NCBI RefSeq assembly: GCF_026571515.1
Contig: NW_026861764.1
Location: 186,001-250,000, forward strand
DNA from: Ruditapes philippinarum
Taxonomy: Eukaryota
DNA: 64,000 nt
Direction of reading: 5' to 3'
A program made the position numbers and the translations under genes. This document shows positions 8,013-62,154 of this stretch, one piece after another (position 1 is the stretch's first letter; the number at the start of each line of letters is the position of its first letter). The notes under the pieces are model-generated. The model was not told the origin of the DNA and ran no database searches. It worked only from the letters and a program-made list of their open reading frames with translations.

Positions 8013-8049
8013 ATGGATAGCTTGAAAATATTTTTTCTTGTTATGCTAT
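8013..8049 (+). CDS. Exon 1: start and signal peptide (MDSLKIFFLVML-W, continuing QVDSVVA)
   Basis: acaATGG start, hydrophobic core, donor T|gtaagt at 8050 (phase 1); an acceptor tttgtatag ending at 7999 suggests an upstream 5'UTR exon. Confidence 0.75.
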
Positions 8050-11000
8050 GTAAGTATATATGTTTATTCAGCGAAATTGTAATATTTTGAGAACAATTAT
8101 TTCAATCTTTTCATTTATGGTGACTTTTCTTATTGAAAGTCATCAGTAAATTTAAAGAAACTGTTTATTTTATAGCGGATCCATTTATTTATTCTACATT
8201 GTCATGTATTTTTCATGTTCTGACTTTAGGGCAAGTGGACAGCGTAGTCGCGCAGAAGCTACTAAGTAGGAGAGCCAACACTTTGAGGTCAATAGAAAAA
8301 TTGATAGTGTATATAAAACTTGGGAATGATGAGGTTTGTGCTGGTGTACAAATGTCTGACGCTTGGATACTCACTCTTGCTGACTGTGTCGATACTAAAA
8401 TGTAAGTTGTATCATATTTTATATCCAAGTTAGGAATATCTGTTACATATTAATATCTATTCTTTTAAATGAGGTACGTATACGTTTTTTTTTTACCACT
8501 ACCGCTGCAGTAGAAAGTAACATATTTTTGTTAAGTAATTCGGAAAAACGATGCGTCATAAAAAAACAGAATTGTTGTTATTAAAGAATAAAGTATTCAT
8601 ATCATTAATGATAGTACATATTCGTTTTATATAGATACACTGAAGTAAACCGAAACGTACTGATCAGTAGACCGACCCTAAAACATAACCTACACTTTAA
8701 AGAGTAAATCACTGTCAACTGCATTGAAACTGAGGGGCGTGGGTCAAACCCCAGAAGGGGCAACATTTTTTTCATTTTTTTAACATTATTTATGTATCTC
8801 TTAGATCCCTTATGGAAAGAAAATAGTGTTTGATTTTAATAAATAAATATAATTATTGTAGGTGTTTATTTGCTAAATAATTTCAAATTTAATAGTAAAT
8901 AGGATACAAGATGTTTTCAAAGTTAAATAAAATAGAAACTACACGGTAAAAGTATTTTATATGTTGCAAGATCTACTTATTTACTTTTTAAAAAATCAAG
9001 GCAAATTTTGAAAACAGTCCCTCATTGTTTTAAATTAAGTGATATTTTGAATAAGGCTTTTTACATAGGGAAATGGTCGAAATGAATGTTTAAAGTGTGT
9101 GAGCAGGGTAACATTTTATACATATTAAAAACATTTTGTTTAGCATCAATTATTTTGTTCGTTAAATTGGTTTCCTGAATGTCATAATGATTATTATTTA
9201 TTAACAATGAGCAATAGAAAAACATTTTTTTCATAAAAACGATATTATAGATTATTTCCTCATTTCTGAAAAAGTGCCCTTCTAAGTGTCGAACGCCCAT
9301 TAACCGCACTGTAAATTTTGTATAAATTTTCATGCAGGTGACCTTTAAGGCATATAACAGTCCTTTGTTGTCAATTTTACAGTTCTTTATAGTGCCCATA
9401 AGGGGTATTCTTCCTGAAATATACATTACCATATTTGTTTTAGGAATTTCATTGGAACTCTACTGCACTTATTTGGTCATGTTTTAAACCCTGGAGAAAA
9501 TCATAGTTTTATGGTTACAAACTATTGGTTTTCTAATGGGACTTTATAAGTGTATAGAAATGAAAAATAGAAATTTAACTGTCTGTAATTTTGTTAAAGG
9601 TGTAAATTAAGAATGCACCAACAAAGTCGGAACTGTTGGTCCGTGTTAAAAATTATTATGCGATAAAACCCTAAAATCATACTGGGTCAGTTGTCATATC
9701 TCAACATATTTATAAATTGAGTAATTACCTTTTATTCTACCCATAAAATATTGTTAAAGTCAGATGCAAAGTGCAAGAAAATCGTAAATTAACAATAACA
9801 TATTACGAAAATAGTGTTAAAGCGTCAAATTTTGTTACTATTAATAGAAATAACTAAAAAAATATGATGTATTTGTAATTGTAGTCATTTTGTCGCAGGT
9901 CGTCTAAAAGGAAACATGGCCGATAAAAGTAATATTTTTTATTAAAATATTTTAAACTTTGTTTAATGTAAAATGGAATTAAAAAAATCGTTTTAAATAG
10001 TTATTTTTGCATCAATAAAGTTCGTTATTTTATATTGATTCGATTAATATATGGATAACAATATACGATATTATGATAAAATAGTATGTACATCTTTTTA
10101 ATTTCTCGGTAATGCCGGTTAGGCGGGATTTTCTTTTATTTATAACACAATAATTTCATTCTTAATATAGAATATGAAATAAGGGTATGATGAATCAGTC
10201 CCGTTCCGTGTACTAAAATAATGATCTTTAAAAACAATCGTTATGTCATTTTAAATATAAATTCTAATACTTCCGGAAATTAAGATATGAAATAATTATG
10301 AAATATTGACAATAGTACGATGTGTCATTCTCCTTATATACTCCAATAATGCTGCCGAAAGTGTGCATTGGTGGTCTTAAAGAGTCCCCTTTACTACTGC
10401 TGCCTATTGTGTATGCATTGTTCTTTTTCTATGTTAATACCACTATGTCATAAAATAAGTGTAACTTTATTTCTGTTTGATATCTACACTTATTTTCTAA
10501 ATTAAAATATATAATCACTTCTGCTGGAAAATTTAAAAAAAGAAGATATGTTTTTACACTGCTTATATCTTACTAATATTCTTTATAATTCAGTCAATTG
10601 TACGTACGATTAATTATAGGAAATTAATCTTTTGTTTAATAACATAATTGTTTAGAAAGTATGTCTCTGAGTAAAAGCACACACAAACTTATGTTTAAAT
10701 TTTCTTGCTTTCTGTTGACAAATAAAGAATGAATTCTTTGTTTCTAAGAATGTAAGAAACTTAAATCCGAATATTAAATGAATAATGGGAGAATGTCTAT
10801 AATATCAACAATATCAATATTTATGAATTCTAAAATCTTCAAATTTAAGAATTCAATTTGGCTTAACAAATGTAAAGTTTTGGAATTTAACACGTTTGTA
10901 TTAGGTAAAGAATGTATTGTCTTGGTACAATACTTTTATAAAAACATGTTAATTCTACCAATGAAATGTGGTGCCATTGCAGCCTTATATATTTCATATT

Positions 11001-14000
11001 TGTAAAAAAGAAATATTTAAAAAATAAAATAAAAATGAACGTGGGCGTATCAAAACTAATGTTTATTTTTAGGACTACTTTCTTAGATGCTTACCATTTG
11101 TAATGACTATCTTCATCGTCGGAATTATCTTATTATGTTTCTTCTTTTCGAAACAGTTATGGCTGCTGTGCCGAGTCACCGAGTCATTACTGCTCGCTAT
11201 ACAATTGCAACTGCACTAAACATGATAAAACTTTTATTAAAATTACACATGTCACTCGGCTTTCCGGCTTGTGAAAATGTATGGAATTTCATCATGTTTC
11301 AGCAAAATATATTCCATATTTGATTCAAGCGATAAAAATATCCTCTTAATAGTCACACATCTGTACGCATGAAAAATTAAATTTACATTATTTTGATAGA
11401 CAAAAACATTAGATTGGAAAGTATTTAAAATTAAGATATTGGAAACATTTTAGCAAATATCGGATAGTTTCTTCATATGTAAGGACAATAATTTAATTAT
11501 GTACAGAAACAGCAGAAGATAACACAGCAAACATCTTTCCTGGTTTATTAGATTCATTTGTATTTCTAGTAAAATAAAATGACAGTCCTCGAAATAAATT
11601 GGTTTTGTTACAATAATTCTTAAACTTTGATATTAAACTACTGAGCCCAAGTATGATGTTGGTCTTTGGCGGACTGCTGATCTTTACATATTTCAAGTTT
11701 GATACCATATAAATCATAAGTTTGCGTACGATTGTTTACTAAGACATATGCAATATAACTATCTCATTCATTTACCTTAGCATTTTAAACAGACGGCCAT
11801 ATTTGCACACATACAAAAAATAAAAGAAAAATAAATCATGAAAAATGAACAAATTTGGATAGTTTTGATGTACATTTGTGATACTTTTTGAAAATATCTC
11901 CTGTATCATTTATGTCATGAGTATACGTATATAATTTCTCGCTCATGGCTTTATTTCTTTTATATATGAGCCACGTCACGACAAAACCAACGCATTCTGA
12001 TCCAGATCCATGCTGTTTGCTATCAGTTTCTCTACTTATAATATATACTTGTCATATGGTTGGTAAGCGAACAGCTTGGATCTGTAATCAGACTGCGCGG
12101 ATGCGCAGGCTGGTCTGGATACATGCTGTTCGCAAACGCACTATGTTGCTTTTGTCGTCACACGACTCATATATTTATATGTATGTGAATTCTCAATTTA
12201 ATATAATGCCGACCGGTATCTATATCATCAGGGCAAATAAACATAAAACCATAGTAACCAACGTCAGCTAACGTTATTTGTGTACACATGTGAACGCAAC
12301 GTAAAAAATGTCGACGTCATTATCAATTTTTGTATAGTTCTGTTTTCAACATATCAGAACAATAAAGCTTACTAAACAAAAATTGATGATAGCGTCAATA
12401 AAAACTTCTCAAATAATTCATTTTTCTTATAAATATATATATTTATGTGTGTGTATGCAAAATTGCCCGTCTTTTTATAATGTAAAGGTTATTTATTCTT
12501 TGAAATTTTAGCAAGCTCGGAAAGTACAGTATCAAAAATCAAGATGGCTTAAAACAGGTTATTGCTGAAGACAGGGTGAGTAAGATAGGTTTTATTATAT
12601 GTGCATTATACTTTATATTTTTTTTTCTAAATACTGATAAATAAATATATCATTTTGGATATTCTGATAGCTAGGGAAATAATGTTGATAAAGGTCTTAT
12701 TAATTTATAATGATCATTTATATGATGAATATGATATTTTGTTCCAGAACATTTTAAAATATGTTATAAATATATATATATAATATCGGATCATGTATCT
12801 TAAACTTGGCAACAACTTCCAAAAATAATAATTTCGTGATTTGATGTTTCTGGTACTTAATATTCATTGTATTAAAGACCTTTTTTTTTACTCAACAGTT
12901 CTTCAACTGTTGTGTAAGTTTAAGAAAATTCCGAGAAAGTTGTACAAAGTTAAAAAATACCGATACGTTGTCATTCTACATAAAATGGATATGAACTAAT
13001 GTTTTTCTAGCATTGTACATGATTTAATTGCAATTTTGTTGAGTTTCAAACATTTCAGTTAAGAACGATTGAAATCAATGGTGAAAAATACTTCATATCA
13101 AACGCGATTTTATTACTCTATTACAGCAGTAGTTAAATGGAAATTACTTTTTATACATAAAATAACTTATTTCCTAACACGACGAGGTTTAAACGTTAAT
13201 AATGCAAACTATGCCAGTGTCGACGGTCTTTAACACCAATACACTCAGATCCAGACATACCTCCGTAGTATAAAACTTTTAAGTATCAGTTTTCCTTCTT
13301 TTTTTCCAAAATGTGTGGTGAATATGTCTCAAGTCTCTTTTTCTAGTCAATATCAAATCTGATATCAAATTTCAAAAATGTATGTTTAAGCAGCTAATGG
13401 CAAAATATTATTCTTTATATTTCAGGACTCCGTTGGCGAAGAATTCGTTCTTCTTCAGATTAAGACAACTAAGAAAACAAAAACTAAATTTGCAAAACTT
13501 TCTAACTTAAGATTGCCCTCACCCGGCTACGATTATCAGCTCTACAGTAAAGACGAGGCCGGTAAATTGTTTGATTGTTTTAGAATTGCATTGCCATTAT
13601 TTCCTTCTTTTCTCAACATTCCAATTCGCTAAAGAATATTTAAATCGGTTTATCAGGTTGAAGTTTGATACATTTATTTTTATCGTCTGTATACGACATT
13701 TCATCAATTCCTGTGCATTATAAACAAAGCGACAGTCACTTTTCGTTTTCTTTTAGAAAAACAATTCTGTACTGTTTCTAAGTAACTATTTCAGAATTTT
13801 TATCTTGTCATATTTCTATATAAACGTGTTAAGTGATATGCATTTGTTTGCTTTATAACTTATTTTTTCAATTTTGTTTATAAAATCCCTGTCTTTGATG
13901 AACTATCTATAATGAGGTACGAATTTGGCCAGCTATTTTATGTGGCGCATCCAAAAGTATCTATACTACTTGTTTGTTCACTCTAATCTAAGTTCAATTA

Positions 14001-17000
14001 TGGATAATTCTATATCTTTGAGTTGCCCTCTGTGGAAAAGTACATGTTCGAATGTTTGCGCCTATTTAAACGTTAGACAATTGTTATATGCCCTTTAAAT
14101 CTTGAGTAGTCTAATTTTAGGCATGAATATATTCCATCAAATTTTCTTTTATTTTGATATGGGATTAATTTGTTAGGCGGAATTCTATTATCTCTATACT
14201 ATTTATATTCCAATATTCCTTCCATAACCTGTCTTTTCTGTTATTTTTCTAATTATGAATGTGTATTTCTCTTTCATAATAAGTGTTACGTGTAGATTTA
14301 AATCGTCACTGCCAGTTTCGAGCATTTATAAGCTCGCTCATTTCGGAAAGACCTACATGACTAGGAATTCATACTATTGCTTTTTTAAGATTTTCCGTTA
14401 TAAATTCGGATTAATTTTTCAATATAAGGGCATTTAGATTTACCCTTGTCCGTCCGTCTGTACGTCCGTCTTTCCGGGCAAACATCAAATTGTCTATGAG
14501 CTTCATTTCTTCCATAATCTTAGTCAAAAAGAGAAAGGAAGGAAATTTCATTAACCGACTGGTTTATGTGATAATTTTACTGGTTTATTGAGGAAAATAC
14601 CACATAAAAGTCAAAGAAACAGCACAAATGTTGGCACGTCCGTCAGTTTTCATTTTGTGTCGCACATACCTTAGAAAGAGTTTGACCTAGAGTCATGAAA
14701 CTTTACAGAAATGATAGTCAGCATGTGTTGTAGTGCACCTGGGTATTTGCATGCGGCTTTATTCAGTATTTGAAGAGTTATTGCTCTTGACTTAGTAAAT
14801 ATTTGCAACTATCAAATTGTATTGCAAGTAGCTCAAAAAGTATTCAACCAAGAGTCATGAAACTTTACAGGAATATTGCTCAGCATGTGAAGTTTTTCAC
14901 ATGGGGTTTCATTTGTATGTTGTTGTTTTTTTGCTTATTTTTGGTCAGAGTACATGTAATTGCATTTTGACTTGAAAATTTTCCAATTTTCAATTTGTTT
15001 TGAGCGTAGTACAAAAAGTATTTAACCCTGAGTCACGGAAATTAATAGAAATTTTGGTCAGCAAGTGTAGCTGTGTACCCTTCTGTTTCGCTTCTGGATT
15101 TATCCAGTAATTCTAAAGTTATTGCCATTGAATTATTACAGAAAATAAGTTTTCAACTTGGGTCTAGTGTGGCAACAAAAAATACTTGACCTAAATAAAT
15201 GAAACTGTAAAAAGTGTTGGTTGGCATGCGGTGTTGTACACCGGGGGTTAGATTGTGGATGTATTCAGTATTTGAAAAGTAATTGCACTTAAATAAGTAA
15301 ACACCGTTCCATTCTGTTATGTTCCTTGAGTGCTTGAGTTGGAATCAACAACTTACAGAAATAATGCTCAACATCTCTGTCTGTGAAGCTGTGCACCAGG
15401 TGTCTTGCATACAGATTTCTGTCAGTTTTGTTAGAGTAATTCCCCTTGTTTTATTATAAATTTAAAATTTTAAACTTATTCATGCATAGCTCAAAATGTA
15501 TTTGACCTGTAGGCCTGAAAGTTTTCAAGAAAGTTGGTCAACATGTGTACTTATGTACCCTGGTGTTTGCTTGAGTATTTATTTATTATCTGTAAAGTTA
15601 TTGCCGTTGACTTAGTAAAACATTTTTAGTTTTCACTTTGTGTCACGTGTAGCACAAAATATTTGATCTAGAGTCATAAGATTGACAATACGGTGGAGTG
15701 TAAAAACACCTGTGTCCTATGGACACATTTATAATTTTATTTGTACCGCTTTTTGGGAGTATACCAATACTGTTAATTAGTTAAAACAACGAGATTAATT
15801 TATGACAAATTTTGCCTTCAGATGAGAGATCGTTTGTTCATATTGTACAATTGTTATCATATAACCAATGTCTTTTTTAACAAATACGTCAGTAAAGCTA
15901 TACTACGAAGATTTAGATTGCTTATACTACATTATAAATTTATTAAATTAGCTTATTGCTTTGATATTACAGATAAAGTAACTGCAAATGATGTTGTTTT
16001 TGTCAAAGGCAATCAATGTGTGAAGAAAGGCATTGAAGGCAGTTTTGGAGAGACACACAAATGTTTTCAAGTCAACATAGGCAAAACTACTAAATGTTTC
16101 GTATGTTCAATTGTTGCATCTCTATATGAAACTTTTTTTACTTTCTACTTTCTACTTTCTAATATATTTTAACTTCCAGTATATGTTAATATCCAATTAT
16201 GTTATTAAATAAATGCATAAATTGGACACTTTAAAGTAAAAAAGCTATATACAAGCTGCATGCAGTTAAAACAAATATTTTAAAACAATTTTGGAAAAAG
16301 AAACACCTGCAGATTATATAAAAGTTATATTATAGTTTATATATTTCTTATGAAGAAAATGACGCATGTACGGTGAAACCGGTATGGTATTCAAGAAGCT
16401 GCACGATTTTTTTCCGAACGCTTCATTCTGTTAAGTTAACGTAAAAATATTTGAATATCAGAGACACCCTTTTACATTATTTATGAGAATTGACCAAATG
16501 ATTAAGGAAACAGCAAGATTTTAATCTTATTCATTTTTGAAATATTATAAAATGCATTCAAGCAAAAAGAAAATACATTTGCATGCAAATGTAGCTTAAA
16601 GTTTAGTTTGCAACATGAATAAAAAACTTATCAGTTAGATTCAACGCACATATAAATAATGCTATTCTTTTTATGTGCTTTGTCTTGTGGCAGTAATGAT
16701 AAGGCTGCATTGAGATCTCAATTTGTTTCGAAAATGTTCACCTGCTCAAGTTTACAAAAACTAGTTTTGATTAGGTCTTGATGTTTTTGAAATTACATTT
16801 CAAAGAAATTGATATCTAAGGGAGCATCTTTTTTATAATTTAAGCCGGGATACCCAATATTTGGATCGAAGAAAAACACAATTATGTTGCAAGGTTTAAC
16901 AGTTGGATCATCAGATTCTTGTTCATCATCGTTTTATTCATATGCGGTCATAAAACCGCAAGTGAGATGGATTAACACGGTCATTTTGGGTATTTATCTT

Positions 17001-56000: not shown

Positions 56001-59000
56001 CTATTTTAAGGGGAAGTAACTCATGTTTACTAAATTATCTGTTCTTTTCTGTCTATCTTAGGTATTACTTATAATACTATTTTTGTTGTATAAAATTTAA
56101 ATTTGAAATGTACAAAGGCAGTATTGCATGATACTTTTAGATCTACAAAGGGCATTTGATACAGTTGATCAAGACTATACTGCACATGAAGAAGTTCTTT
56201 TTCTTCTTCTTCATGAAACTTCAAGCATCTGCCATATGTAATGAAATTCTTACATGGTTTAAGTCTTATCTCTGATAGACAGCAGCTGGTGGATGTGGCT
56301 AGTACTCATTCTAGTACTGCTCTGAGTACCTATGTTGTCCCCCTGATGTTCATTTTTAGAAGACATATGACCAGATTGATAAAAAAACCCGTGTTCATCT
56401 TAAAAGTGTCAAAACCAAAATAAAATGTAAATAATGACCCCCTTAAAAATATACTTTAAGTAAATAGTATATTTTTAAAGGGGGTCATTATTTACATTTT
56501 TGTTTTGTTTTTATGAACACAGTTTTTTTTTTATCAATCTGGTCATATTTTTCTTCCCAGGTTATGATTATATGCTGATGACTCAGGAATCCTTGTGTCT
56601 GGTAAAATAAATCTGAAGAAATTCTTTCTTTTAGTATGAGTCTTATAAGACTGGTCAATTGACTATAAATTGTCTTTGCATCTTAGAAAGTCTATTCTTT
56701 TTGGTATAAGTTTCAACTTAAACTATGCCTAGCCTCCAGGTCACATGTAATTGAACTGTTATAAAGTACAAATCTTTTGTTAAGTATTTAGGTGCAAACC
56801 TGGATAAAATTCTTTTGGCGTCGCCCTTTGATGCTTTGCAGAAATGCTTTTCTTGTATTTGTATCTGAAATAGTGCATTAATAAAACATTACTGGTAACT
56901 ATTGCTAATTGAACAACAGTTGCAAAATATGTGTACATGTTAAGGAAATCAATAAACCTTTGAGGCGAGGCCAATTTTGACCCCAGGGTTTTTATTTGAA
57001 AAAACTTGCTAGACACTCATTAGATGATGCTCCTTGCTAAACAGCTAATCTCTAGCTCTTTGAGGTTTTTAAAAGAGGACTTCTAAGTTTCTCTATATAC
57101 ATATAAGATAAATCAATGACCCAGGGGCGGGGCTTAAAGTTGTGAACGCATTAGGAATGCTGAATTTTGATACTAAACAACTGAACTTTTGTTTTTAAGT
57201 TGTGCAGTAAATAAAGCTACTGATAAATTGCAAATCTTTGTTCAGTTTTATAAATAAACTCAAATGTGATGAATTAAAAATGCAAACGTGAGGAATTAAA
57301 ACAAATATTATAAGAACATTTAAAATGAAGCAGATTTGTCATCAATGAAAACAATTATTTCAGTTTGATAAGGCAACAGTGACAAATGTTTCCCTCTCTG
57401 TCACGATATCGAATAAAGACACATTGGTTTTCAGCGAAATTAAATAAAAATAGTTATATCTTTATGGAGAGATAACTACATGTATCAAATAGATCTTTTT
57501 ATATTTCATATAGATGGCACAACTCCTATTCATTTGAAGCTGTTTTGGTATATTTTTCTTGGCAAATACTCTCGCAGAAAATGATTTTGTAACAAGAGAA
57601 ACAAAAATGGATGACAAAAATCACCTTAAACTTCTGCACTGAAATACAATATGGCATTTATTTAAAATCGTTAAAATAATTATGAAATTGCTTTATCTCC
57701 TGCAGAATGACTGCGAATCAAGAAAAGGATATCTTCTTGAAATCACCTCTCCTTCTGAAAACTATTTTGTAAAAGGTCTGGTCGGCTACAATTGTAAGTA
57801 TAGAAAGTTATAACAGTATAGCATTTTAAAGTGAACAGCTTATTATTTTTTTATATTTGGTTGGAGTTACAATTAAACACAATAAAGACCATATGGCCAC
57901 TTTCCTTAGTTATTTAGTTCATTTTGTGTGTTTAACCAATTGCACACTACAAATGTTTTAAACGTCAGAAGCAAAACCCATTCCTGAACGCATGCCTCTC
58001 ACTAAAAATAACACTTTGCTCTAACCAATAAGTTGTTTTCATACAAACTACACATGTACGTTCGAATTGATTTTGACTATAAAAATAAAGGTTGCAAAAG
58101 TTTCATTTTGGAAATCTGATTGCTCCATTTAGAATCTTCAATCATCTGTAGCTCAAATTTGGTATTTTGACAACAATGCAATCTGATTTTTTCTAAAGGA
58201 CTCTTTCAAACAATTTGATTTTAACATTTTTTGAAAGCCTAAGGTCATTTAAAACAGTCTTTTTCTGTCATACAATTTTCTAACATTTGCGTAAACATGA
58301 TGACATTATGCAGATTGTAGGTGCACAAGTGCATATTTACAGGAAACCGCCAGTGGGGAGTTGCATAACTCGTAATAAATGTATGATATATCTTTATTCT
58401 TTGTTTGGGTCGTCAGACCAAACAAATAATGGTTGCGAAATTTCAGACCCTGATATGCTTATTTGCAAAACCCGAAAGTAGTCAGAACTCCTCGAAGTGG
58501 TTACTTCTCTTTATGTACACTAACCCCGAATATTAAAGAGAGATCACTGCTTAAAGATTGTCAAAAGACAGATGCATTATTTTTCAACCTTTTTTGGGGA
58601 AGTAAAAATAGTTCCCGATTGGTCGAACATTTGTAATATGGTATAATTCTTTACAGATAGATATACATGCTCCATGATTATTTACGTAAGTATTTTACAA
58701 CAGGTGTACCGTAAAATATATCTCGAAGTTAATTAGTGTGAAAAAACCCTAATTCAGAATAATGTGATTTTCTTCAGACTGTTATCTTATACCTTCCCCG
58801 TGGTCGAGGAGTTTCATGCTCGTTTAGGTAGCTAGAGAGTTTGTTTTGCTGAACTAACATTAAATTGAATATCAATGTTGCAATTAGCCATATAGCAACT
58901 TTACTACAGATATAACACTGGAAACAGCATTGGTAGCACTATAGAAAAATAAATTGGTTTAATTTCCCACAACTGTCACCTTTCTTTCATTCTGAGACCA

Positions 59001-62000
59001 AAACAAAGTCAGCGCCTTCTGTTATAATATTGATATGTGATATCTCAATTATATCTATTATGCTTTAGAAAATCATATTCATGTAAATTTTGTTTAACTT
59101 TAAGATTTTTAAAGGGGGTCTTGGAGATGGCCTTTGACTTAGTATGGGACTGTCTACGCGCCGTACACTTGTGACTATGATCATACATTTAATTTAGAAG
59201 GACTTGAAGACCAAACATACCTTTTGGTATCAACGAAAGACCACTAAATTTATGTGTAATACTTTAAAAAAATAAAATAATCTCAGTTTTATTTACAAAC
59301 AAGAGCCGGCTGAACCGGGTGATGCTCCCCGACTAGGTTTTGGACACAGAAAAGTATATATATCTTTATATCTTATATAGTTTGATAGTTATGTCCCAGA
59401 CAATCAGTGATAATTCAACACTTAGGCAAGGCAGAGTTACTGTTCTTTGTACTGCACTTCTACTTAATGAGATCTATATACCGACTTGCGCGCCACACGT
59501 CGTCTCAATATGGTGATCATTTATGTGAAAAAAGTGTAAAATCCGACTTCAAATAACAAAGTTATGGACCGGAAACGATTTTGCTGCAAGGTCATGTTGT
59601 GACCTTGACCATCCAAGTAGCGACCAATATACTAGGCGCGATACGTCCTCTCAATATGGTGATCATTTCTGTGAAATATTTGTTAAATCCGACTTCAAAT
59701 AACGAAGTTATGCAACGGACACGATTAAGCTTCAAGGTCATGCTGTGACAGTGACCTTAAATATAGCGACCAAAATGTTCCACCCGACGTGTCGTCTCAA
59801 TATGGCGATCATTTCTGTGAAATATATTGTACTGCACTTCTACTCAATGAGATCTATATACCGACTTGCGCGCCACACGTCGTCTCAATATGGTGATCAT
59901 TTCTGTGAATAAAGTGTAAAATCCGACTTCAAATAACAAAGTTATGGACCGAAAACGATTTTGCTGCAAGGTCATGTTGTGACCTTGACCATCAAAGTAG
60001 CGAACAAAATACTGGGCGCGATACGTCCTCTCAATATTGTGATCAATTCTGTGAAATATTTGTTAAATCCGGCTTCAAATAACGAAGTTATGAGCCGGGC
60101 ACGACTTTGCTACAAGGTCATGCTGTGACCTTGACCTTCAAGGTAGTGACCCAAATGTTGCGCACGACACATCTTCTTAATATGGAGATCATTTATGTGG
60201 TATAGCTGTAAAATACGACTTCAAATAACGAAGGCCAGACACGATTTGGCTTCAAGGTCATACTGTGACCTTGACCTTCAAGGTAGCGACCCTAATGTTG
60301 TTCGCAAGACGTCGTCACAATATGGTGATCATTTCTATGAAATAGTTGTAAAATCCGACTTCAGATATCGAAGCTATTGGCGGACACAATTTTGCTTCAA
60401 AGTCATGCTGTAACCTTGACCTTCAAGGTAGCGACCCAGATGTTGCGCGCGACACGTCTTTTGAATGTGGTGATCATTTTTGTGAATTTGTTTTAAAATC
60501 CGACTTCAAATAACAAAGTTATGGGCCGGACACGAATTCGGGACGTAACATGAAAGACGTGCTTTATTTAATTATATACCTTTCTAGAAAAATCAGATTT
60601 ATATTTTATGCCATATGAAAAACCTTCCAGTCCATATGCTCGTATCTATAGTAAAAGGTATGAAGAAATGTTAATAAATTTGAAAAAAAATACACGTTTT
60701 CCCTCATAGAAAAGATTGCGAGGGATATGGTAATACGATAATTTTCGTCCGTGCGTCTACCCGTTTTTCTTTTTTTGATTAATATATTAACTTTATTTAA
60801 GTTACAGATATACTATAGTTTATAAAGTTAAATATATCTTCTAACATAGATAAAGAGGCATACAATGAAATCTTTATGAGCACCCAGGTCTGTCCAGTGC
60901 ATCTCTTATATGAATAATTGTTAACAAAGAAAAACCGCCATAATTTATAAATTGAAATTTTAGAGCATCACCTAAAAATGCAAACTGCGCTTGCTACCGA
61001 TGGAACTTTGACTATCTGTACACATTAGCATTATAATCGGATATATAGCTAGACAGACCCCCTTGAAGAAAAATGCAATGAACAGGAATGGGAACCCCAC
61101 CCTTTTATGGTTTCGGAGTTATTACTCTTTTTTTTTTAGTGTTCCACTTTTAGTAGAAAAGTTGAGCTATTATCACAAACATCTTTTATAAATTTAAAAT
61201 GTCGGTGCAAAGGAATGATCCTCTTTTTATGGCACATTTTTCTGTTCGATGTGAGATATTACAGTCTGTAAAATAAATGTTTCTTGTTTTACATTAAAAC
61301 AGGGGGTACAACGTAATTTTTGAACGTTTGATATCTTAAGGACGAAATTGTACATTGGGACTATAAAATGTTATTTTTCAGATGCTTGGATGGGATTAAA
61401 CGACATAGAAACAGAAGGTACATTTTTGTGGGGATATACAGGAACAGTATTTGACTCAATCTTATTAGGCAAAACCATTCTCAGAAATGATGAGGATCCC
61501 GGAAGAGATTGTGTATATTACGATGGAATATATGATGATTGGTATGCAACATACTGTGACGACGACTCCGCATTCAAATACGTGTGCGAAATTTCACTCA
61601 GTGAGTAAAATCATTATTATAATAATTTCTTTTTACAAGTGTTGAAATGACATATGATTTAAAAAAAAAATCTGTAGCGTTACAATATTACTGTAGCTTT
61701 ATTGTGTTACATTGTAATCATTTGTAGACCAAGACCAAGGATACTATCCTTGGACCTAAGATTACTGTCCTACAGTTTTACTAAAGAGCTTTCGATATCG
61801 ATAACAAGTGAACGGTTAGTTACAATGACATTAAAAATAAATATCATTGTTTTTGATAACTAGAAAATTGTTGATTGTAACGTTTGTTGTCGTAGTTGAT
61901 GTATAAGGTCCAGCGTCTTATATTCTTTTAATGATAACGAAAACTGTCAATGTGTTTCTTTATTTATTAAGGCTTATCATATTGTATCGACAACTTAGTA

Positions 62001-62154
62001 ATATTGTTCATTAAATGTAAACCCAACTCAATAGAAGTATATAATTTTTAATATCAACATAGAATCAATAAGTGTCTTTAAAAGATCTTTTCGGAGACGG
62101 TTGTGCACTATGATTCAGTGAATATTATGCATTTCTTCTCTTTCAGAAATATAA
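8013..62154 (+). CDS. Whole gene (26 coding exons, 1250 aa): secreted trypsin-like pseudo-protease + 16 CCP/sushi + C-type lectin domain protein
   Basis: Exon lengths 37+172+64+136+128+145+3x174+165+171+10x165+168+80+88+219+8 = 3753 nt, all GT-AG, phases compatible, no internal stops; domain motifs recognised by eye. Confidence 0.85.
8230..8401 (+). CDS. Exon 2: pseudo-protease N-terminal part (...EVCAGVQMSDAWILTLADCVDTK)
   Basis: Matches trypsin CGG.LI...WVLTAAHC motif with H->D; acceptor ctttag, donor gtaagt (phase 2). Confidence 0.85.
9420..10350 (+). repeat. Dispersed repeat, copy 1 (homologous to 52750-53690)
   Basis: Shared blocks such as gatgcaaagtgcaagaaa, gtcaaattttgttacta, gaaataagggtat. 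Confidence 0.75.
11964..12172. mobile_element. MITE
   Basis: TIRs atatgagccacgtcacgacaaaacc / gcttttgtcgtcacacgactcatat. Confidence 0.75.
12512..12575 (+). CDS. Exon 3: pseudo-protease (IKLGKYSIKNQDGLKQVIAEDR)
   Basis: aattttag acceptor, AGG|gtgagt donor, phase 2->0 bridges exons 2 and 4; KLGKYSI resembles VRLGEHNI. Confidence 0.75.
13426..13561 (+). CDS. Exon 4: pseudo-protease (DSVGEEFVLLQIKTTKKTKTKFAKLSNLRLPSPGYDYQLYSKDEA)
   Basis: tttcag acceptor, G|gtaaat donor; only one frame open; EFVLLQI aligns with DIALLKL. Confidence 0.8.
14420..15735 (+). mobile_element. HINE/pearl-like non-autonomous element with internal about 145-bp tandem array
   Basis: gtccgtccgtctgtacgtccgtc head, repeated ttgacctagagtcatgaaact units, tgtgtcc-tat-ggacaca 3' hairpin. 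Confidence 0.7.
15973..16100 (+). CDS. Exon 5: pseudo-protease (DKVTANDVVFVKGNQCVKKGIEGSFGETHKCFQVNIGKTTKCF)
   Basis: ttacag acceptor, gtatgt donor (phase 0); Cys at C168, C182 and C191 equivalents. Confidence 0.8.
16845..16989 (+). CDS. Exon 6: pseudo-protease C-terminal part (PGYPIFGSKKNTIMLQGLTVGSSDSCSSSFYSYAVIKPQVRWINTVIL)
   Basis: Aligns with GDSGGPLV...LQGIVSWG..C.....YTRV..Y.DWI; weak aag acceptor after T-tract, G|gtattt donor (phase 1). Confidence 0.75.
18608..18781 (+). CDS. CCP/sushi exon 1 (Lys-rich)
   Basis: DCGSVENIKNG...CDPGY...IVCLKTGKWQKSICAKK; tttgcag / gtaaaa; 174 nt phase 1-1. Confidence 0.92.
20729..20902 (+). CDS. CCP/sushi exon 2 (Lys-rich)
   Basis: DCGPVKNIVHG...CSPGY...CLDTGKWETARC; 174 nt phase 1-1. 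Confidence 0.92.
22506..22679 (+). CDS. CCP/sushi exon 3 (Lys-rich)
   Basis: DCGPVKKIGNG...CSPGF...CSDNGKWEKARC; 174 nt phase 1-1. Confidence 0.92.
24865..25029 (+). CDS. CCP/sushi exon 4
   Basis: DCETPSNVVNGTLHFSTTTYGSNASVVCDRGYNGSHTTISCLDNGSWEIPTCAIK; 165 nt. Confidence 0.9.
27522..27692 (+). CDS. CCP/sushi exon 5 (6-nt in-frame insertion)
   Basis: DCGFPLNVTNG...CDRGYMHDGNGTISCLDTGSWETPPRC; 171 nt. Confidence 0.88.
27740..28335 (+). mobile_element. HINE/pearl-like element with about 135-bp tandem units in the intron after CCP5
   Basis: Repeated ttgacaccaaa...aaggtcaaggtca...gttactaaa; 3' end gcggcgcttcttgtt. Confidence 0.7.
29049..29213 (+). CDS. CCP/sushi exon 6 (type A)
   Basis: 165 nt, ttcag / gtcact, 4 Cys + Trp. 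Confidence 0.9.
30421..30585 (+). CDS. CCP/sushi exon 7 (type B)
   Basis: 165 nt, ttcag / gtcaat, 4 Cys + Trp. Confidence 0.9.
31784..31948 (+). CDS. CCP/sushi exon 8 (type C)
   Basis: 165 nt, ttcag / gtcaat, 4 Cys + Trp. Confidence 0.9.
33120..33284 (+). CDS. CCP/sushi exon 9 (type A)
   Basis: 165 nt, ttcag / gtcatt. Confidence 0.9.
34488..34652 (+). CDS. CCP/sushi exon 10 (type B)
   Basis: 165 nt, ttcag / gtcaat. Confidence 0.9.
35865..36029 (+). CDS. CCP/sushi exon 11 (type C)
   Basis: 165 nt, ttcag / gtcaat. Confidence 0.9.
37082..37246 (+). CDS. CCP/sushi exon 12 (type A)
   Basis: 165 nt, ttcag / gtcatt; not in the ORF track but intact. Confidence 0.9.
38350..38514 (+). CDS. CCP/sushi exon 13 (type B)
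   Basis: 165 nt, ttcag / gtcaat. Confidence 0.9.
39705..39869 (+). CDS. CCP/sushi exon 14 (type C)
   Basis: 165 nt, ttcag / gtcaat. Confidence 0.9.
40921..41085 (+). CDS. CCP/sushi exon 15 (A-like, divergent 3' end WETQAMCSII)
   Basis: 165 nt, ttcag / gtcaat. Confidence 0.9.
42246..42837. mobile_element. PIF/Harbinger-type MITE
   Basis: TIR (a)gccccagtcacactagagcttacga at both ends; TAA target duplication at 42243-45 and 42838-40. Confidence 0.85.
43650..44625 (+). mobile_element. HINE/pearl-like element with about 145-bp tandem units
   Basis: agctc..gagct hairpin plus cgtccgtcgtc head, repeated gattggcccc..aaagctaaa, end gccctcttgttt. Confidence 0.7.
44689..44856 (+). CDS. CCP/sushi exon 16
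   Basis: DCGSPLNVING...CDSGYDGDGTISCLDTGMWEIPPSCSPIP; 168 nt, tttgcag / gtcaat. Confidence 0.9.
44916..45160 (+). mobile_element. 5'-truncated tRNA-derived SINE
   Basis: B box ggttcgattcc, gattgatcatgaaatc core; interrupts the intron repeat unit after CCP16. Confidence 0.65.
45664..45881 (+). mobile_element. tRNA-derived SINE with (AAAC)n tail and 15-bp TSD
   Basis: A box gtggtcgagggg, B box gggttcgatccc, TSD cattacctattaatg at 45649-63 and 45882-96. Confidence 0.9.
46643..47370. mobile_element. Old foldback/MITE with long degenerate inverted arms
   Basis: ttttattaacctgtcaa vs ttgacaggtcaataaaat; cttcgg / ccgaag. Confidence 0.5.
47425..47504 (+). CDS. C-type lectin exon 1 (ECPEGWTKFAKSCYLFQQNKVLFKEAK)
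   Basis: Long-form CTLD CP.GW......CY.F motif; ttttag / gtaata; phase 1->0. Confidence 0.9.
49876..49973 (+). mobile_element. Minimal (about 100 bp) HINE-like element, both ends only
   Basis: 3' half is the reverse complement of 59297-59348. Confidence 0.65.
51255..52470 (+). mobile_element. 5'-truncated CR1/L2-type LINE: ORF2 C-terminus plus 3'UTR
   Basis: EYADTVWDN..IQLEAA..RRTKHKLILFYKMIN..NSFLPST..HARLRMHCSSL; disrupted. Confidence 0.85.
52750..53690 (+). repeat. Dispersed repeat, copy 2 (homologous to 9420-10350)
   Basis: See copy 1. Confidence 0.75.
53722..54978. mobile_element. TA-flanked foldback MITE with about 21-bp subrepeat arms and a nested insertion
   Basis: ta|cggtgcacaaa ... 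tttgtgccaccg|ta; arms of gagatactatgtcgtggccac-like units. Confidence 0.75.
56110..56810 (+). mobile_element. Decayed LINE reverse-transcriptase fragment interrupted by a palindromic insert (56366-56548)
   Basis: LDLQRAFDTVD, WFKSYL, YADDSGILVSG, YLGANLD motifs with frameshifts. Confidence 0.75.
57706..57793 (+). CDS. C-type lectin exon 2 (NDCESRKGYLLEITSPSENYFVKGLVGYN)
   Basis: C....G.L..I.S..EN.FV motif; ctgcag / gtaagt; phase 0->1. Confidence 0.9.
59297..60550 (-). mobile_element. HINE/pearl-like element with about 150-bp satellite array (includes a 380-bp internal duplication)
   Basis: Terminus aacaagagccggctgaaccgggtgatgctcccc; repeated ccgacttcaaataac..tgaccttgacc. Confidence 0.75.
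61382..61600 (+). CDS. C-type lectin exon 3 (AWMGLNDIETEGTFLW...DCV...W....CDDDSAFKYVCEISL)
   Basis: WxGL, EG.F.W and YVCE motifs; tttcag / gtgagt; phase 1-1. Confidence 0.92.
62147..62154 (+). CDS. Probable terminal coding exon (K-I-stop), followed by 3'UTR
   Basis: Strong acceptor tttcttctctttcag; A|AA ATA TAA. Confidence 0.65.

What the first reader, a model, noticed from the sequence alone, without database searches (positions are those of the whole stretch)
8013..62154. Secreted protein with an inverted complement-like architecture: dead protease - 16 sushi - C-type lectin
Seen: a frame-consistent 26-exon ORF of 1250 aa with a signal peptide and no transmembrane segment. Known: in CCP-bearing S1 proteins (factor B/C2, C1r/s, MASPs, haptoglobin, horseshoe-crab Factor C, which also has a CTLD) the protease domain is C-terminal, and in selectins the lectin is N-terminal to the CCP stalk. 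Here the order is reversed and both end domains have lost their canonical active motifs. I do not recognise this architecture from any characterised protein. Inference: a long two-headed rod acting as a bridging molecule (opsonin/agglutinin, or shell, mucus or egg-coat cross-linker). Automated annotation would probably call it SVEP1/factor-H-like and miss the protease head.
Basis: partly seen in the sequence, partly recalled or inferred. Interest (0 to 1): 0.9.

Follow-up and report, generated by a model that had tools for sequence, protein, structure and literature searches.

The report
Clam dead-protease–sushi–lectin secreted protein family
The window holds one long clam gene for a secreted rod-like protein with a dead trypsin-like head, 16 sushi modules and a non-canonical C-type lectin tail. 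It belongs to a family of about 16-20 such genes in the Manila clam whose lectin end evolves much faster than the head, so it looks like an undescribed immune-type recognition family, but its function is untested.

Summary
On the + strand I rebuilt a frame-consistent model of 25 AG/GT exons and 1250 aa. It has a signal peptide, a five-exon S1 (trypsin-fold) domain with the whole triad lost (H57D, D102E, S195P with D194 deleted), 16 phase 1-1 sushi exons that all pass Pfam, a three-exon C-type lectin domain with its Ca2+/sugar site lost (EPN to LRN, WND to WYA), and no transmembrane segment.

RNA contigs show GT..AG joints exactly at three predicted borders, linking the head to the sushi array. 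The genome is Ruditapes philippinarum. It holds at least 16 loci with this head. All six loci I could read in full repeat the same exon order with 5-15 sushi exons.

RefSeq models of paralogs are fragments named "SVEP1-like" or "uncharacterized". One of them runs from the last protease exon through to the lectin domain. Among close paralogs the head is under purifying selection (dN/dS 0.16-0.56), while the lectin domain evolves at or above the neutral rate (0.75-1.77).

Best reading: a soluble bridging or recognition molecule with a constant pseudoprotease docking end and a variable lectin end. That function is inferred. I found no characterised protein with this domain order. I rate it a new variant of known mosaic immune lectins. 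The same window's head and sushi array were also noted by the scan (s1-794030, s1-794076).

The parts
8013..8049 (+). Exon 1: ATG and signal peptide (MDSLKIFFLVML + 1 base), donor GTAAGT
   Evidence: model. RefSeq paralog models P0021 and P0022 start with the same peptide and the same junction. The only hydrophobic 19-mer window of the protein lies here.
8230..8401 (+). SP-a: end of the signal peptide (predicted cleavage after VVA) and the first S1 exon. Holds Cys42, WILTLADC (His57 to Asp) and Cys58.
   Evidence: Pfam Trypsin 15.2 bits, profile 15-46. Genome search gives 16 strong paralogous copies, 19 at E<0.001. Local HMM alignment.
12512..12575 (+). SP-b: second S1 exon (IKLGKYSIKNQDGLKQVIAEDR)
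   Evidence: Conserved in order in 5 of 6 paralog loci by tblastn. Present in RefSeq paralog models.
13426..13561 (+). SP-c: third S1 exon. GEEFVLLQI holds the Asp102 position, which is Glu here.
   Evidence: RNA contig joint 13561|15973, GT..AG, in runs X1 and X2. HMM alignment.
15973..16100 (+). SP-d: fourth S1 exon with Cys168, Cys182 and Cys191
   Evidence: RNA joints 13561|15973 and 16100|16845. Invariant Cys columns across paralogs and canonical trypsins.
16845..16989 (+). SP-e: fifth S1 exon. PGYPIF stands in place of GDSGGP (Ser195 to Pro, Asp194 deleted). Also holds Cys220 and the C-terminal WI motif.
   Evidence: RNA joints 16100|16845 and 16989|18608. 18 copies in the genome. HMM alignment.
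18608..25029 (+). CCP1-CCP4, four phase 1-1 sushi exons of the proximal types: 18608-18781, 20729-20902, 22506-22679, 24865-25029
   Evidence: Pfam Sushi E 1.7e-12 to 5.9e-8. An RNA contig runs from SP-e into CCP1, and its loose end after 18781 reads the start of a CCP2.
27522..41085 (+). CCP5-CCP15, eleven phase 1-1 sushi exons of the distal type: 27522-27692, 29049-29213, 30421-30585, 31784-31948, 33120-33284, 34488-34652, 35865-36029, 37082-37246, 38350-38514, 39705-39869, 40921-41085. They include a roughly 4 kb three-exon cassette repeated three times.
   Evidence: Pfam Sushi 32-43 bits each. Self-blastn gives 93-95% identity between 4 kb units against about 83% between neighbouring 1.37 kb units.
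44689..44856 (+). CCP16: last sushi exon, 3 nt longer, ending ...CSPIP and linking to the lectin domain
   Evidence: Pfam Sushi 28.4 bits. RefSeq paralog models P0020, P0023 and P0026 splice their last CCP straight onto ECP(E/G)GW.
47425..47504 (+). CTLD-a: first lectin exon (ECPEGWTKFAKSCYLF...)
   Evidence: Phase-compatible AG acceptor. Homologous exon in the same place in six paralog loci. The junction is used in RefSeq paralog models.
57706..57793 (+). CTLD-b: second lectin exon (NDCESRKGYLLEITSPSENYF...)
   Evidence: Pfam Lectin_C profile 11-35 in register, E 0.16. Paralog colinearity.
61382..61608 (+). CTLD-c: third lectin exon with WMGLND, the long loop (LRN in place of EPN), WYA in place of WND, and stop TAA at 61606-61608
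   Evidence: Pfam Lectin_C 23.2 bits against a cut-off of 22.6. Alignment to CD23 and mannose receptor chains. 22 copies in the genome.
62147..62154 (+). It would be used only if the GTGAGT right after ...EISL acts as a donor. It changes the C-terminus from SE to KI.
   Evidence: Sequence only. The GTGAGT is conserved in five of the six paralog loci read, but it also encodes the stop. Undecided.

Best explanation
SHOWN. The window (contig C10251 of a Ruditapes philippinarum assembly) carries one intact + strand gene of 25 coding exons spread over about 54 kb. It encodes a 1250-aa secreted protein built from these parts, in order:
- a signal peptide;
- a catalytically dead S1/trypsin-fold domain that starts straight after the signal peptide, with no pro-peptide, no Ile16 and Asp194 deleted. 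The triad is H57D, D102E, S195P. The three core disulfides are kept;
- a stalk of 16 sushi/CCP modules, one exon each;
- a C-terminal long-form C-type lectin domain whose canonical Ca2+ site 2 is destroyed.

It is one member of a clam family of at least 16 head-bearing loci with the same layout. Family members differ in stalk length (5-16 CCP). In at least one member the tail is PAN/Apple instead of a CTLD.

INFERRED. The protein is a soluble, elongated two-ended adaptor. The fast-evolving lectin end recognises variable, probably non-self ligands by a non-canonical and probably Ca2+-independent surface on the long loop and beta4 region. The conserved pseudoprotease end binds a constant host partner: an active protease or serpin, a C3/TEP-type protein, or a haemocyte receptor. 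In this it would resemble other pseudoproteases such as haptoglobin, the HGF/MSP beta chains and arthropod serine-protease homologues. The CCP stalk sets the reach and is easily lengthened by unequal crossing-over of exon cassettes. The net effect would be opsonisation, agglutination or recruitment of an effector to a target.
For: Gene model: frame-consistent, with all AG/GT sites.

Domains: Pfam Sushi for all 16 CCP exons. Lectin_C above the cut-off for the last exon. Pfam Trypsin above the cut-off for five paralog models, including P0021, which is 92.5% identical over the head. A local trypsin HMM aligns the joined head from end to end and places the triad substitutions. All 30 nearest ESM Atlas clusters are trypsin families. 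Foldseek hits of a weak model are all S1 fold, with the HGF beta chain first.

One gene: RNA contig joints with GT..AG lie exactly at 13561|15973, 16100|16845 and 16989|18608, and the contig continues into a CCP2. Six paralog loci repeat the order SP-a..e, then n CCP, then CTLD-a..c. In five of them the intron between SP-e and CCP1 is only about 190-350 bp. RefSeq model P0023 runs from inside SP-e through four CCPs into a complete CTLD and maps at 100% identity to locus C4573. P0020 and P0026 join CCP to CTLD. P0021, P0016, P0018 and P0017 join signal, head and CCPs.

Secreted: only the N-terminus is hydrophobic.

Function: head dN/dS is 0.16-0.56 and bootstrap-significantly below 1 in most pairs. 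CTLD dN/dS is 0.75-1.77 at similar dS. The variation is concentrated in the long loop and beta4 segments while the Cys and core motifs are kept. In one paralog the tail module is swapped for PAN. In the oyster, a CTLD+CCP lectin binds a MASP-like protease and triggers C3 cleavage (PMC8605247). That shows this combination of modules works in bivalve humoral immunity.
Against: - No single transcript or annotated protein covering the head through to the CTLD was seen for any family member. All RefSeq models are 292-744 aa fragments.
- The RNA contigs are 95-100% identical to the window, and their CCP2 end differs at 2 of 30 bases. They may therefore come from an allele or a close sister copy.
- Junctions from CCP2 onward in this window, including CCP16 to CTLD-a and the 10 kb and 3.6 kb introns inside the CTLD, rest on homology only.
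- Two deep RNA runs (X9, X15) showed almost no exon signal and no joints.
- CTLD dN/dS above 1 is not individually significant. Bootstrap P(dN>dS) is 0.19-0.97, which also fits relaxed constraint.
- No tissue, ligand or partner is known.
- AlphaFold models of the head were poor: pLDDT 46 and 52.
Confidence: 0.55

Rival explanations
1. The locus does not make one 1250-aa protein. It makes shorter products instead: a head plus one or two CCPs ending in an alternative 3' exon, and/or a CCP-CTLD or plain CTLD protein from an internal start. On this reading the 'inverted complement-like' rod exists only on paper.
For: - Every RefSeq model of the family is short.
- Two paralog models (P0021, P0024) end after CCP2 or CCP1 in a shared extra exon (...KQCQLGNNRMTFKSGV).
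- The window has a degenerate copy of that exon at 21674-21724, between CCP2 and CCP3.
- An in-frame ATG at 47370 gives a hydrophobic leader in front of CTLD-a.
- RNA support in this window reaches only as far as CCP2.
Against: - All 24 junctions are phase-compatible, with no stop over 3.75 kb.
- P0023 bridges SP-e to the CTLD in one model.
- The order is kept in six loci that have diverged to 55-60% identity in the head. That is not expected for independent neighbouring genes with 190-bp spacers.
- The ATG at 47370 lies in the polypyrimidine tract of the acceptor. In the other subfamily stop codons lie about 20 codons upstream of CTLD-a, leaving only a short in-frame Met that cannot form a signal peptide.
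- Several short RefSeq models end by reading into an intron, which is typical of truncated predictions.
Confidence: 0.12
2. Same protein, but with a non-immune role. It would be a gamete-recognition or egg-coat protein, or an extracellular cross-linker of mucus, byssus, periostracum or shell matrix. The fast-evolving lectin end would then reflect sexual conflict or relaxed constraint.
For: - Rapid evolution of a lectin-type module and a variable repeat number are also typical of bivalve fertilisation proteins (my own knowledge, not tested here).
- The canonical sugar site is lost.
- Two large RNA-seq runs of the species show next to no expression.
- The oyster CTLD-CCP lectin is also high in gonad.
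Against: - A family of at least 16 loci with interchangeable tails (CTLD or PAN) and conserved heads is more typical of immune repertoires than of gamete proteins.
- The protein has no low-complexity or acidic matrix-type sequence.
Confidence: 0.2
3. The CCP array is the working part. On this reading the protein is a factor-H or CR1-like regulator that binds clam C3/TEP, and the head and lectin domain only help with localisation.
For: The best PDB sequence matches of the family profile are CR1, factor H, CR2 and DAF. The distal CCP exons are the most conserved part across paralogs, at 85-94% identity.
Against: The high similarity of distal CCPs is better explained by recent cassette duplication and gene conversion, given 93-95% identity including introns. 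The number of CCPs is not conserved (5-16). Similarity to complement regulators is generic to sushi modules.
Confidence: 0.1
4. The window copy is a young pseudogene or non-functional duplicate of an expressed sister gene.
For: The RNA contigs fit a sister copy at least as well. The CTLD here has lost the helix-1 Trp that the paralogs keep (LFKEAK against TWENAK). The CTLD introns are long and filled with repeats.
Against: The ORF is intact over 25 exons with all splice sites canonical. CCP1 contigs are 100% identical to the window (records 8 and 16). Head dN/dS against C4573 is 0.45.
Confidence: 0.05

Closest known systems
Oyster CgCLec-CCP (Crassostrea gigas C-type lectin with a CCP domain; PMC8605247)
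   Same: A secreted bivalve protein that combines a CTLD having a non-canonical motif with a sushi module. It works together with an S1-family module (CgMASPL-1) in humoral immunity.
   Different: It has one CCP and one CRD and no protease domain of its own. Its partner protease is a separate, active protein. In the clam gene the S1 module is fused at the N-terminus and is dead, the stalk has 16 CCPs, and the WND-type site is gone.
Limulus Factor C, and vertebrate C1r/C1s/MASP and factor B/C2
   Same: Secreted immune mosaics built from CCP and S1 domains. Factor C also has a CTLD.
   Different: There the protease is C-terminal, catalytically active and made as a zymogen. Here it is N-terminal, with no pro-region, no triad and no Asp194.
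Haptoglobin; HGF and MSP beta chains; protein Z; arthropod serine-protease homologues (masquerade, PPAF-II type)
   Same: S1-fold pseudoproteases used as protein-binding modules. Haptoglobin also carries CCP modules. The HGF beta chain was the top Foldseek match.
   Different: None has a CTLD or a long CCP stalk. Their pseudoprotease domain is C-terminal. The arthropod SPHs need a clip domain, which is absent here.
Selectins and Drosophila Furrowed
   Same: A CTLD attached to a variable-length CCP stalk.
   Different: In those proteins the lectin is N-terminal, followed by EGF and ending in a TM anchor, and the Ca2+ site is canonical. Here the order is reversed, there is no EGF or TM, and the site is lost.
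SVEP1/polydom (the name RefSeq gives to paralogs)
   Same: Many sushi repeats.
   Different: No vWA, EGF, HYR or pentraxin domains were found. The name reflects sushi similarity only.
Snail FREPs and CREPs, and bivalve-specific CTLD-containing mosaics (PMC10140915)
   Same: Lineage-specific, expanded families of secreted proteins with a variable lectin-type recognition domain on a constant scaffold. Sushi+CTLD combinations are reported as bivalve-specific architectures.
   Different: The scaffold here is a pseudoprotease plus CCP stalk, not IgSF. The paper does not mention a trypsin-fold head.

Membership tests
Peptidase S1 / Pfam Trypsin (PF00089) fold | Significant match to the family profile over the whole domain | tested here: met
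   Window exons tested alone: SP-a scores only 15.2 bits, below the cut-off of 20.6. Paralog models pass: P0021 at 26.6 bits (92.5% identical head), P0024 at 28.2 bits over profile 16-220/220, and P0022, P0002 and P0016. A local HMM of 20 canonical domains aligns the joined window head over 14-227/227 at 27.9 bits. The joined protein was not sent to Pfam.
Peptidase S1 / Pfam Trypsin (PF00089) fold | Core disulfides Cys42-Cys58, Cys168-Cys182, Cys191-Cys220 | tested here: met
   Six Cys columns are invariant across family heads and canonical trypsin domains.
Active S1 serine protease | Catalytic triad His57, Asp102, Ser195 and the GDSGGP motif | tested here: not met
   WILTLADC (H57D), GEEFVLL (D102E), and CF--PGYP (S195P, D194 deleted). 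The same losses occur in all family members aligned.
Active S1 serine protease | Zymogen activation: a pro-peptide cleaved to expose Ile16, which pairs with Asp194 | tested here: not met
   The domain begins right after the predicted signal cleavage (…VVA|QKLL). There is no IVGG-type N-terminus and Asp194 is absent.
Sushi/CCP (PF00084) | Profile match with four Cys and the conserved Trp, one module per phase 1-1 exon | tested here: met
   16 of 16 exons score 28-48 bits against a cut-off of 20.7. Phases are given.
C-type lectin-like domain (PF00059) | Profile match; the WIGL motif and the Cys framework of a long-form CTLD | tested here: met
   CTLD-c alone scores 23.2 bits against 22.6. CTLD-b matches in register. 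Paralog CTLDs score 54-55 bits. The CPEGW...C, NDC, WMGLND, DC and YVCE elements are all present.
Ca2+-dependent carbohydrate-binding C-type lectin (CRD) | Ca2+ site 2 ligands: EPN/QPD, the following Glu, and WND | tested here: not met
   Aligned to CD23: EPN reads LRN, Glu reads Arg, WND reads WYA. The paralogs also lack these motifs.
Selectin | N-terminal CTLD, then EGF, then CCPn, then a TM anchor | tested here: not met
   The order is reversed. There is no EGF hit and no TM segment.
SVEP1/polydom | vWA, EGF, HYR and pentraxin domains besides sushi | tested here: not met
   No such Pfam hits in the window exons or in paralog models.
Clip-domain serine protease homologue (arthropod SPH) | N-terminal clip domain before the dead protease domain | tested here: not met
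   Nothing lies between the signal peptide and the S1 domain. There is no CLIP hit in family members.

The most novel reading that the evidence does not exclude
The family is a clam-specific, germline-diversified recognition system. It has a constant pseudoprotease effector-docking head, a length-variable CCP stalk made by cassette duplication, and an interchangeable, positively selected tail (CTLD or PAN). It would work as a fused, non-catalytic version of the mollusc lectin pathway pair (lectin plus MASP-like). It would either recruit an active protease or C3/TEP to targets, or act as a decoy regulator of that pathway.
Probability: 0.2. Interest if true: 0.75.

Novelty: new variant of a known kind. 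Interest (0 to 1): 0.5.

Why it matters
Bivalves have no adaptive immunity and rely on greatly expanded lectin repertoires. How recognition is coupled to effectors is mostly unknown.

This family hard-wires a variable lectin to a conserved dead protease through an adjustable stalk. That gives a concrete and testable candidate for such coupling, and a natural case of an S1 pseudoenzyme kept under purifying selection.

It also matters for annotation. RefSeq splits these loci into fragments named 'SVEP1-like' or 'uncharacterized'. The architecture is therefore invisible in protein databases and in domain-architecture surveys.

The Manila clam is a major aquaculture species troubled by Vibrio and Perkinsus. 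A new class of recognition molecules could be relevant to resistance breeding.

Tried and rejected
Joined protein. Exons were searched one by one by reference. The joined sequence was used only inside local scripts, for the frame check, hydropathy, alignment to fetched proteins and a local HMM.

AlphaFold.
- On a 6-row family alignment it gave pLDDT about 25 for the head.
- On a 16-row alignment that included canonical trypsins it gave pLDDT 52 and pTM 0.52.
- Foldseek then returned only S1-fold chains. This is weak and not independent, because trypsins were in the alignment.

Database searches.
- The PDB profile search with whole paralog models was swamped by sushi proteins. Only complement C2 matched the head region.
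- The search of protein representatives with SP-a found only two true relatives, a 62-aa fragment and P0002.
- The search for homologous proteins on the heads of P0021 and P0017 found only R. philippinarum proteins and no full-length model. Length limits and the need for shared words mean longer or more distant relatives could have been missed.

Tools that stopped.
The closest paralogs (C8699, C7445, C15444, C6256) could therefore be mapped only by coordinates.

RNA. Raw reads of X9 and X15 gave intronic repeat signal but no exon joints. Only one read-laying run of at most 6 kb was allowed, so the CCP16 to CTLD junctions were not tested.

Other checks.
- Pfam on nine other ORFs of the window found nothing.
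- MAFFT global alignment misplaced the C-terminal half of the head. I replaced it with the HMM alignment.
- I rejected the ATG at 47370 as a real start.
- I rejected an extra protease exon between 13.6 and 15.9 kb, because the RNA joint goes directly from 13561 to 15973.

Full report
What is in the sequence

The window is AT-rich (about 30% GC). Its + strand carries a long series of short open exons. I rebuilt the gene independently from splice sites and phases.

The model has 25 exons and 3753 nt, and encodes 1250 aa with no internal stop. Every acceptor is AG and every donor is GT. Exon 1 (8013-8049) gives MDSLKIFFLVML. Five exons follow for a trypsin-like domain: 8230-8401, 12512-12575, 13426-13561, 15973-16100 and 16845-16989. 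Next come 16 exons of 165-174 nt between 18608 and 44856, all in phase 1-1 and each beginning (D)CG. Three lectin exons close the gene: 47425-47504, 57706-57793 and 61382-61608.

It would be reached from a GTGAGT that overlaps the last codons, and it would change only the final two residues. That GTGAGT is conserved in five of the six paralog loci read, but there it also encodes Cys-Glu-stop. One RefSeq paralog model ends in KK instead. I leave this point open.

Exons were searched by reference, and the joined sequence was handled only in local scripts.

Domain identity

All 16 sushi exons pass the Pfam Sushi gathering score at 28-48 bits.

The last lectin exon alone passes Lectin_C (23.2 bits against 22.6). 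The middle exon matches in register.

The head is too diverged to be recognised exon by exon: Trypsin scores 15.2 bits for the first exon and nothing for the other four. Complete paralog proteins do pass Pfam Trypsin:
- P0021, 26.6 bits, 92.5% identical to the window head;
- P0024, 28.2 bits over profile 16-220 of 220;
- P0022, P0002 and P0016.

A local HMM that I built from 20 canonical trypsin domains aligns the joined window head over positions 14-227 of 227. In that alignment TAAHC reads TLADC (His57 to Asp). NDIAL reads EEFVL (Asp102 to Glu). C-Q-G-D-S-G-G-P reads C-F-(two-residue gap)-P-G-Y-P, so Ser195 is Pro and Asp194 is deleted. The six cysteines of the three core disulfides are invariant.

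The domain starts straight after the predicted signal cleavage site, so there is no zymogen step.

ESM Atlas feature neighbours are all trypsin clusters, which counts as a lead only. The AlphaFold models were poor, at pLDDT 46 and 52. Foldseek on the better model returned only S1-fold chains, with the HGF beta chain first. That alignment contained trypsins, so I count the result as weak.

In the lectin domain, alignment to CD23 shows EPN as LRN, the next Glu as Arg, and WND as WYA. Four of the five Ca2+ site-2 ligands are therefore gone.

Hydropathy finds no segment other than the signal peptide.

Is it one gene?

Three kinds of evidence say yes.

1. RNA. In two 2015 runs of the same species (X1, X2), assembled contigs skip 13561|15973, 16100|16845 and 16989|18608 with GT..AG ends, exactly at my borders. 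A contig that ends at 18781 continues with the first 30 bases of a CCP2 exon. These contigs are 95-100% identical to the window. The CCP2 tail differs at 2 of 30 bases, so an allele or a close sister copy may be the source. The splice pattern is nevertheless the predicted one.

2. Paralogs. The genome (1.41 Gb, 15,874 contigs) has 16 strong copies of the first head exon (19 at E<0.001), 18 copies of the last head exon and 22 copies of the last lectin exon. In ten contigs all three lie on one strand in the right order within 17-75 kb. I fetched six loci in full. All show SP-a..e, then 5, 8, 8-9, 6, 10 or 15 sushi exons, then CTLD-a, b, c. In five of them the intron between SP-e and CCP1 is only about 190-350 bp.

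3. Annotation. The genome is Ruditapes philippinarum. The relatives found are RefSeq proteins of that species, lying on contigs of the same lengths as mine. P0023 maps at 100% identity to locus C4573. RefSeq has only fragments, but they overlap:
- P0021, P0022, P0002, P0016, P0018 and P0017 join signal, head and 1-9 sushi modules.
- P0020 and P0026 join sushi modules to the lectin domain.
- P0023 starts at an internal Met in the last protease exon and runs through four sushi modules into a complete lectin domain.

What is missing is a single read or model from exon 1 to the lectin domain. Direct RNA support in this window for the junctions after CCP2 is also missing. I could lay reads only once, on at most 6 kb. 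Two deep RNA runs (X9, X15) showed only intronic repeats.

An in-frame ATG at 47370 in front of the first lectin exon lies in the acceptor's pyrimidine tract. In the other subfamily stop codons lie about 20 codons upstream of that exon, leaving only a short in-frame Met that cannot form a signal peptide. I do not take the 47370 ATG for a start.

What the family adds

The head was found only in R. philippinarum proteins, with the caveat that these searches have limited reach.

The distal sushi type occurs only in head-bearing loci or in contig fragments of such loci.

The sushi array in the window contains a roughly 4 kb three-exon cassette repeated three times. The cassette copies are 93-95% identical, introns included, whereas neighbouring single units are about 83% identical. 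This agrees with scan note s1-794076.

One paralog (P0018) carries a PAN/Apple domain where the others have the lectin domain.

Codon comparison within a five-locus subfamily gives these values:
- Head: dN 0.02-0.06, dS 0.08-0.21, dN/dS 0.16-0.56.
- Lectin domain: dN 0.19-0.32, dS 0.15-0.25, dN/dS 0.75-1.77.

The lectin-domain changes are crowded into the long loop and the stretch before the last strand, while the cysteines and core motifs stay. The pairwise bootstraps for dN above dS are not individually significant (0.19-0.97). I therefore call this fast, possibly diversifying evolution, not proven positive selection.

Between the window and its nearest fully read paralog (C4573), the head is 86% identical and the lectin domain only 56%. 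Synonymous divergence is also higher in the lectin domain (0.40 against 0.16). The two ends therefore have partly separate histories.

How it most likely works

Shown: a secreted, cysteine-rich protein with 23 N-glycosylation sequons, a dead S1 head, a 16-module stalk and a non-canonical lectin tail.

Inferred: the conserved head is a docking module for a constant host partner, as in other S1 pseudoproteases. The variable tail recognises diverse ligands without the classical Ca2+ site. The stalk sets the distance and changes length by unequal exchange of exon cassettes.

The oyster lectin CgCLec-CCP (one CRD plus one CCP) binds a MASP-like protease and drives C3 cleavage (PMC8605247). The three module types therefore do cooperate in bivalve humoral defence. 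In the clam gene the protease-like module is fused and inactive.

A survey of bivalve CTLD proteins lists sushi+CTLD mosaics as bivalve-specific and uncharacterised, and does not mention a trypsin-fold head (PMC10140915). I give the immune bridging reading about even odds.

The rivals are separate or short isoforms, a reproductive or matrix role, a factor-H-like role for the stalk, and a dead duplicate. They are weighed in their own sections.

Comparison and novelty

The protein is a member of the S1 fold, sushi and CTLD superfamilies by profile. It fails the tests for an active protease, a Ca2+-dependent CRD, a selectin, SVEP1 and a clip-domain SPH.

The order pseudoprotease, then CCPn, then CTLD was not found in any paper or protein I could reach. 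Mosaic, lineage-specific immune lectins and pseudoproteases are both well known, and bivalves are notorious for domain shuffling. I therefore rate it a new variant of a known kind, of moderate interest.

Limits

- The tissue of origin of the RNA runs is coded and unknown.
- The function is untested.

Noticed in passing
window 21674-21724 (+), between CCP2 and CCP3: A degenerate copy of an extra 3' exon. RefSeq uses that exon to end two paralog models after CCP1 or CCP2 (P0021 ...DYKQCQLGNNRMTFKSGV; P0024 ...ECKQCQLDHNRTTIKSGV). In the window it reads DYAQCQ and then a stop. It may give a short isoform of head plus two sushi modules, or it may be a relic.
   Followed up: partly
window 28900-41800: A higher-order tandem array. 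A roughly 4 kb unit of three sushi exons with their introns is repeated three times at 93-95% identity, while neighbouring 1.37 kb sub-units are about 83% alike. This matches scan note s1-794076.
   Followed up: yes
window 14280-15860 (intron between SP-c and SP-d): Short repeat elements with very high depth in all four RNA or contig runs (up to thousands) and many chimeric joints and loose ends. They are probably abundant transcribed interspersed repeats and not part of the gene.
   Followed up: no
window 59447-60535 (intron between CTLD-b and CTLD-c): A satellite-like tandem array with periods of 146, 234, 285 and 380 bp, 78-90% matches, 2-4.6 copies. It creates several spurious ORFs on the + strand.
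   Followed up: no
window 47370-47426: An in-frame ATG followed by a hydrophobic run (MLSYCILLCNFVDMCLLL) directly in front of the first lectin exon. It mimics a signal peptide. It lies in the acceptor's pyrimidine tract. C4573 shares it, but in the other subfamily stop codons lie about 20 codons upstream of the lectin exon, leaving only a short in-frame Met.
   Followed up: yes
paralog P0018 (RefSeq, contig of 616,457 bases; probably C1293): [quoted passage not shown] The tail module is therefore interchangeable within the family.
   Followed up: partly
L011-L013 (G000:C10283:127001-155000, minus strand): Directly after the complete gene comes a partial duplicate of two sushi exons plus a second three-exon lectin domain. 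This is a tandem duplication of the 3' end.
   Followed up: no
paralog models P0022 and P0024 (RefSeq): Both models look chimeric. P0024 has about 190 residues of unrelated, transposon-like sequence in front of the head. P0022 continues after CCP2 into a Lys/Arg-rich tail with no domain hit.
   Followed up: no
window 61606-62154: The sequence CTC-AGT-GAG-TAA at the end of the ORF is both Ser-Glu-stop and a good GTGAGT donor. The motif is kept in five of the six paralog loci read. In C10713 the stop is lost (GAGTAT). C4573 stops directly after CELSL.
   Followed up: partly
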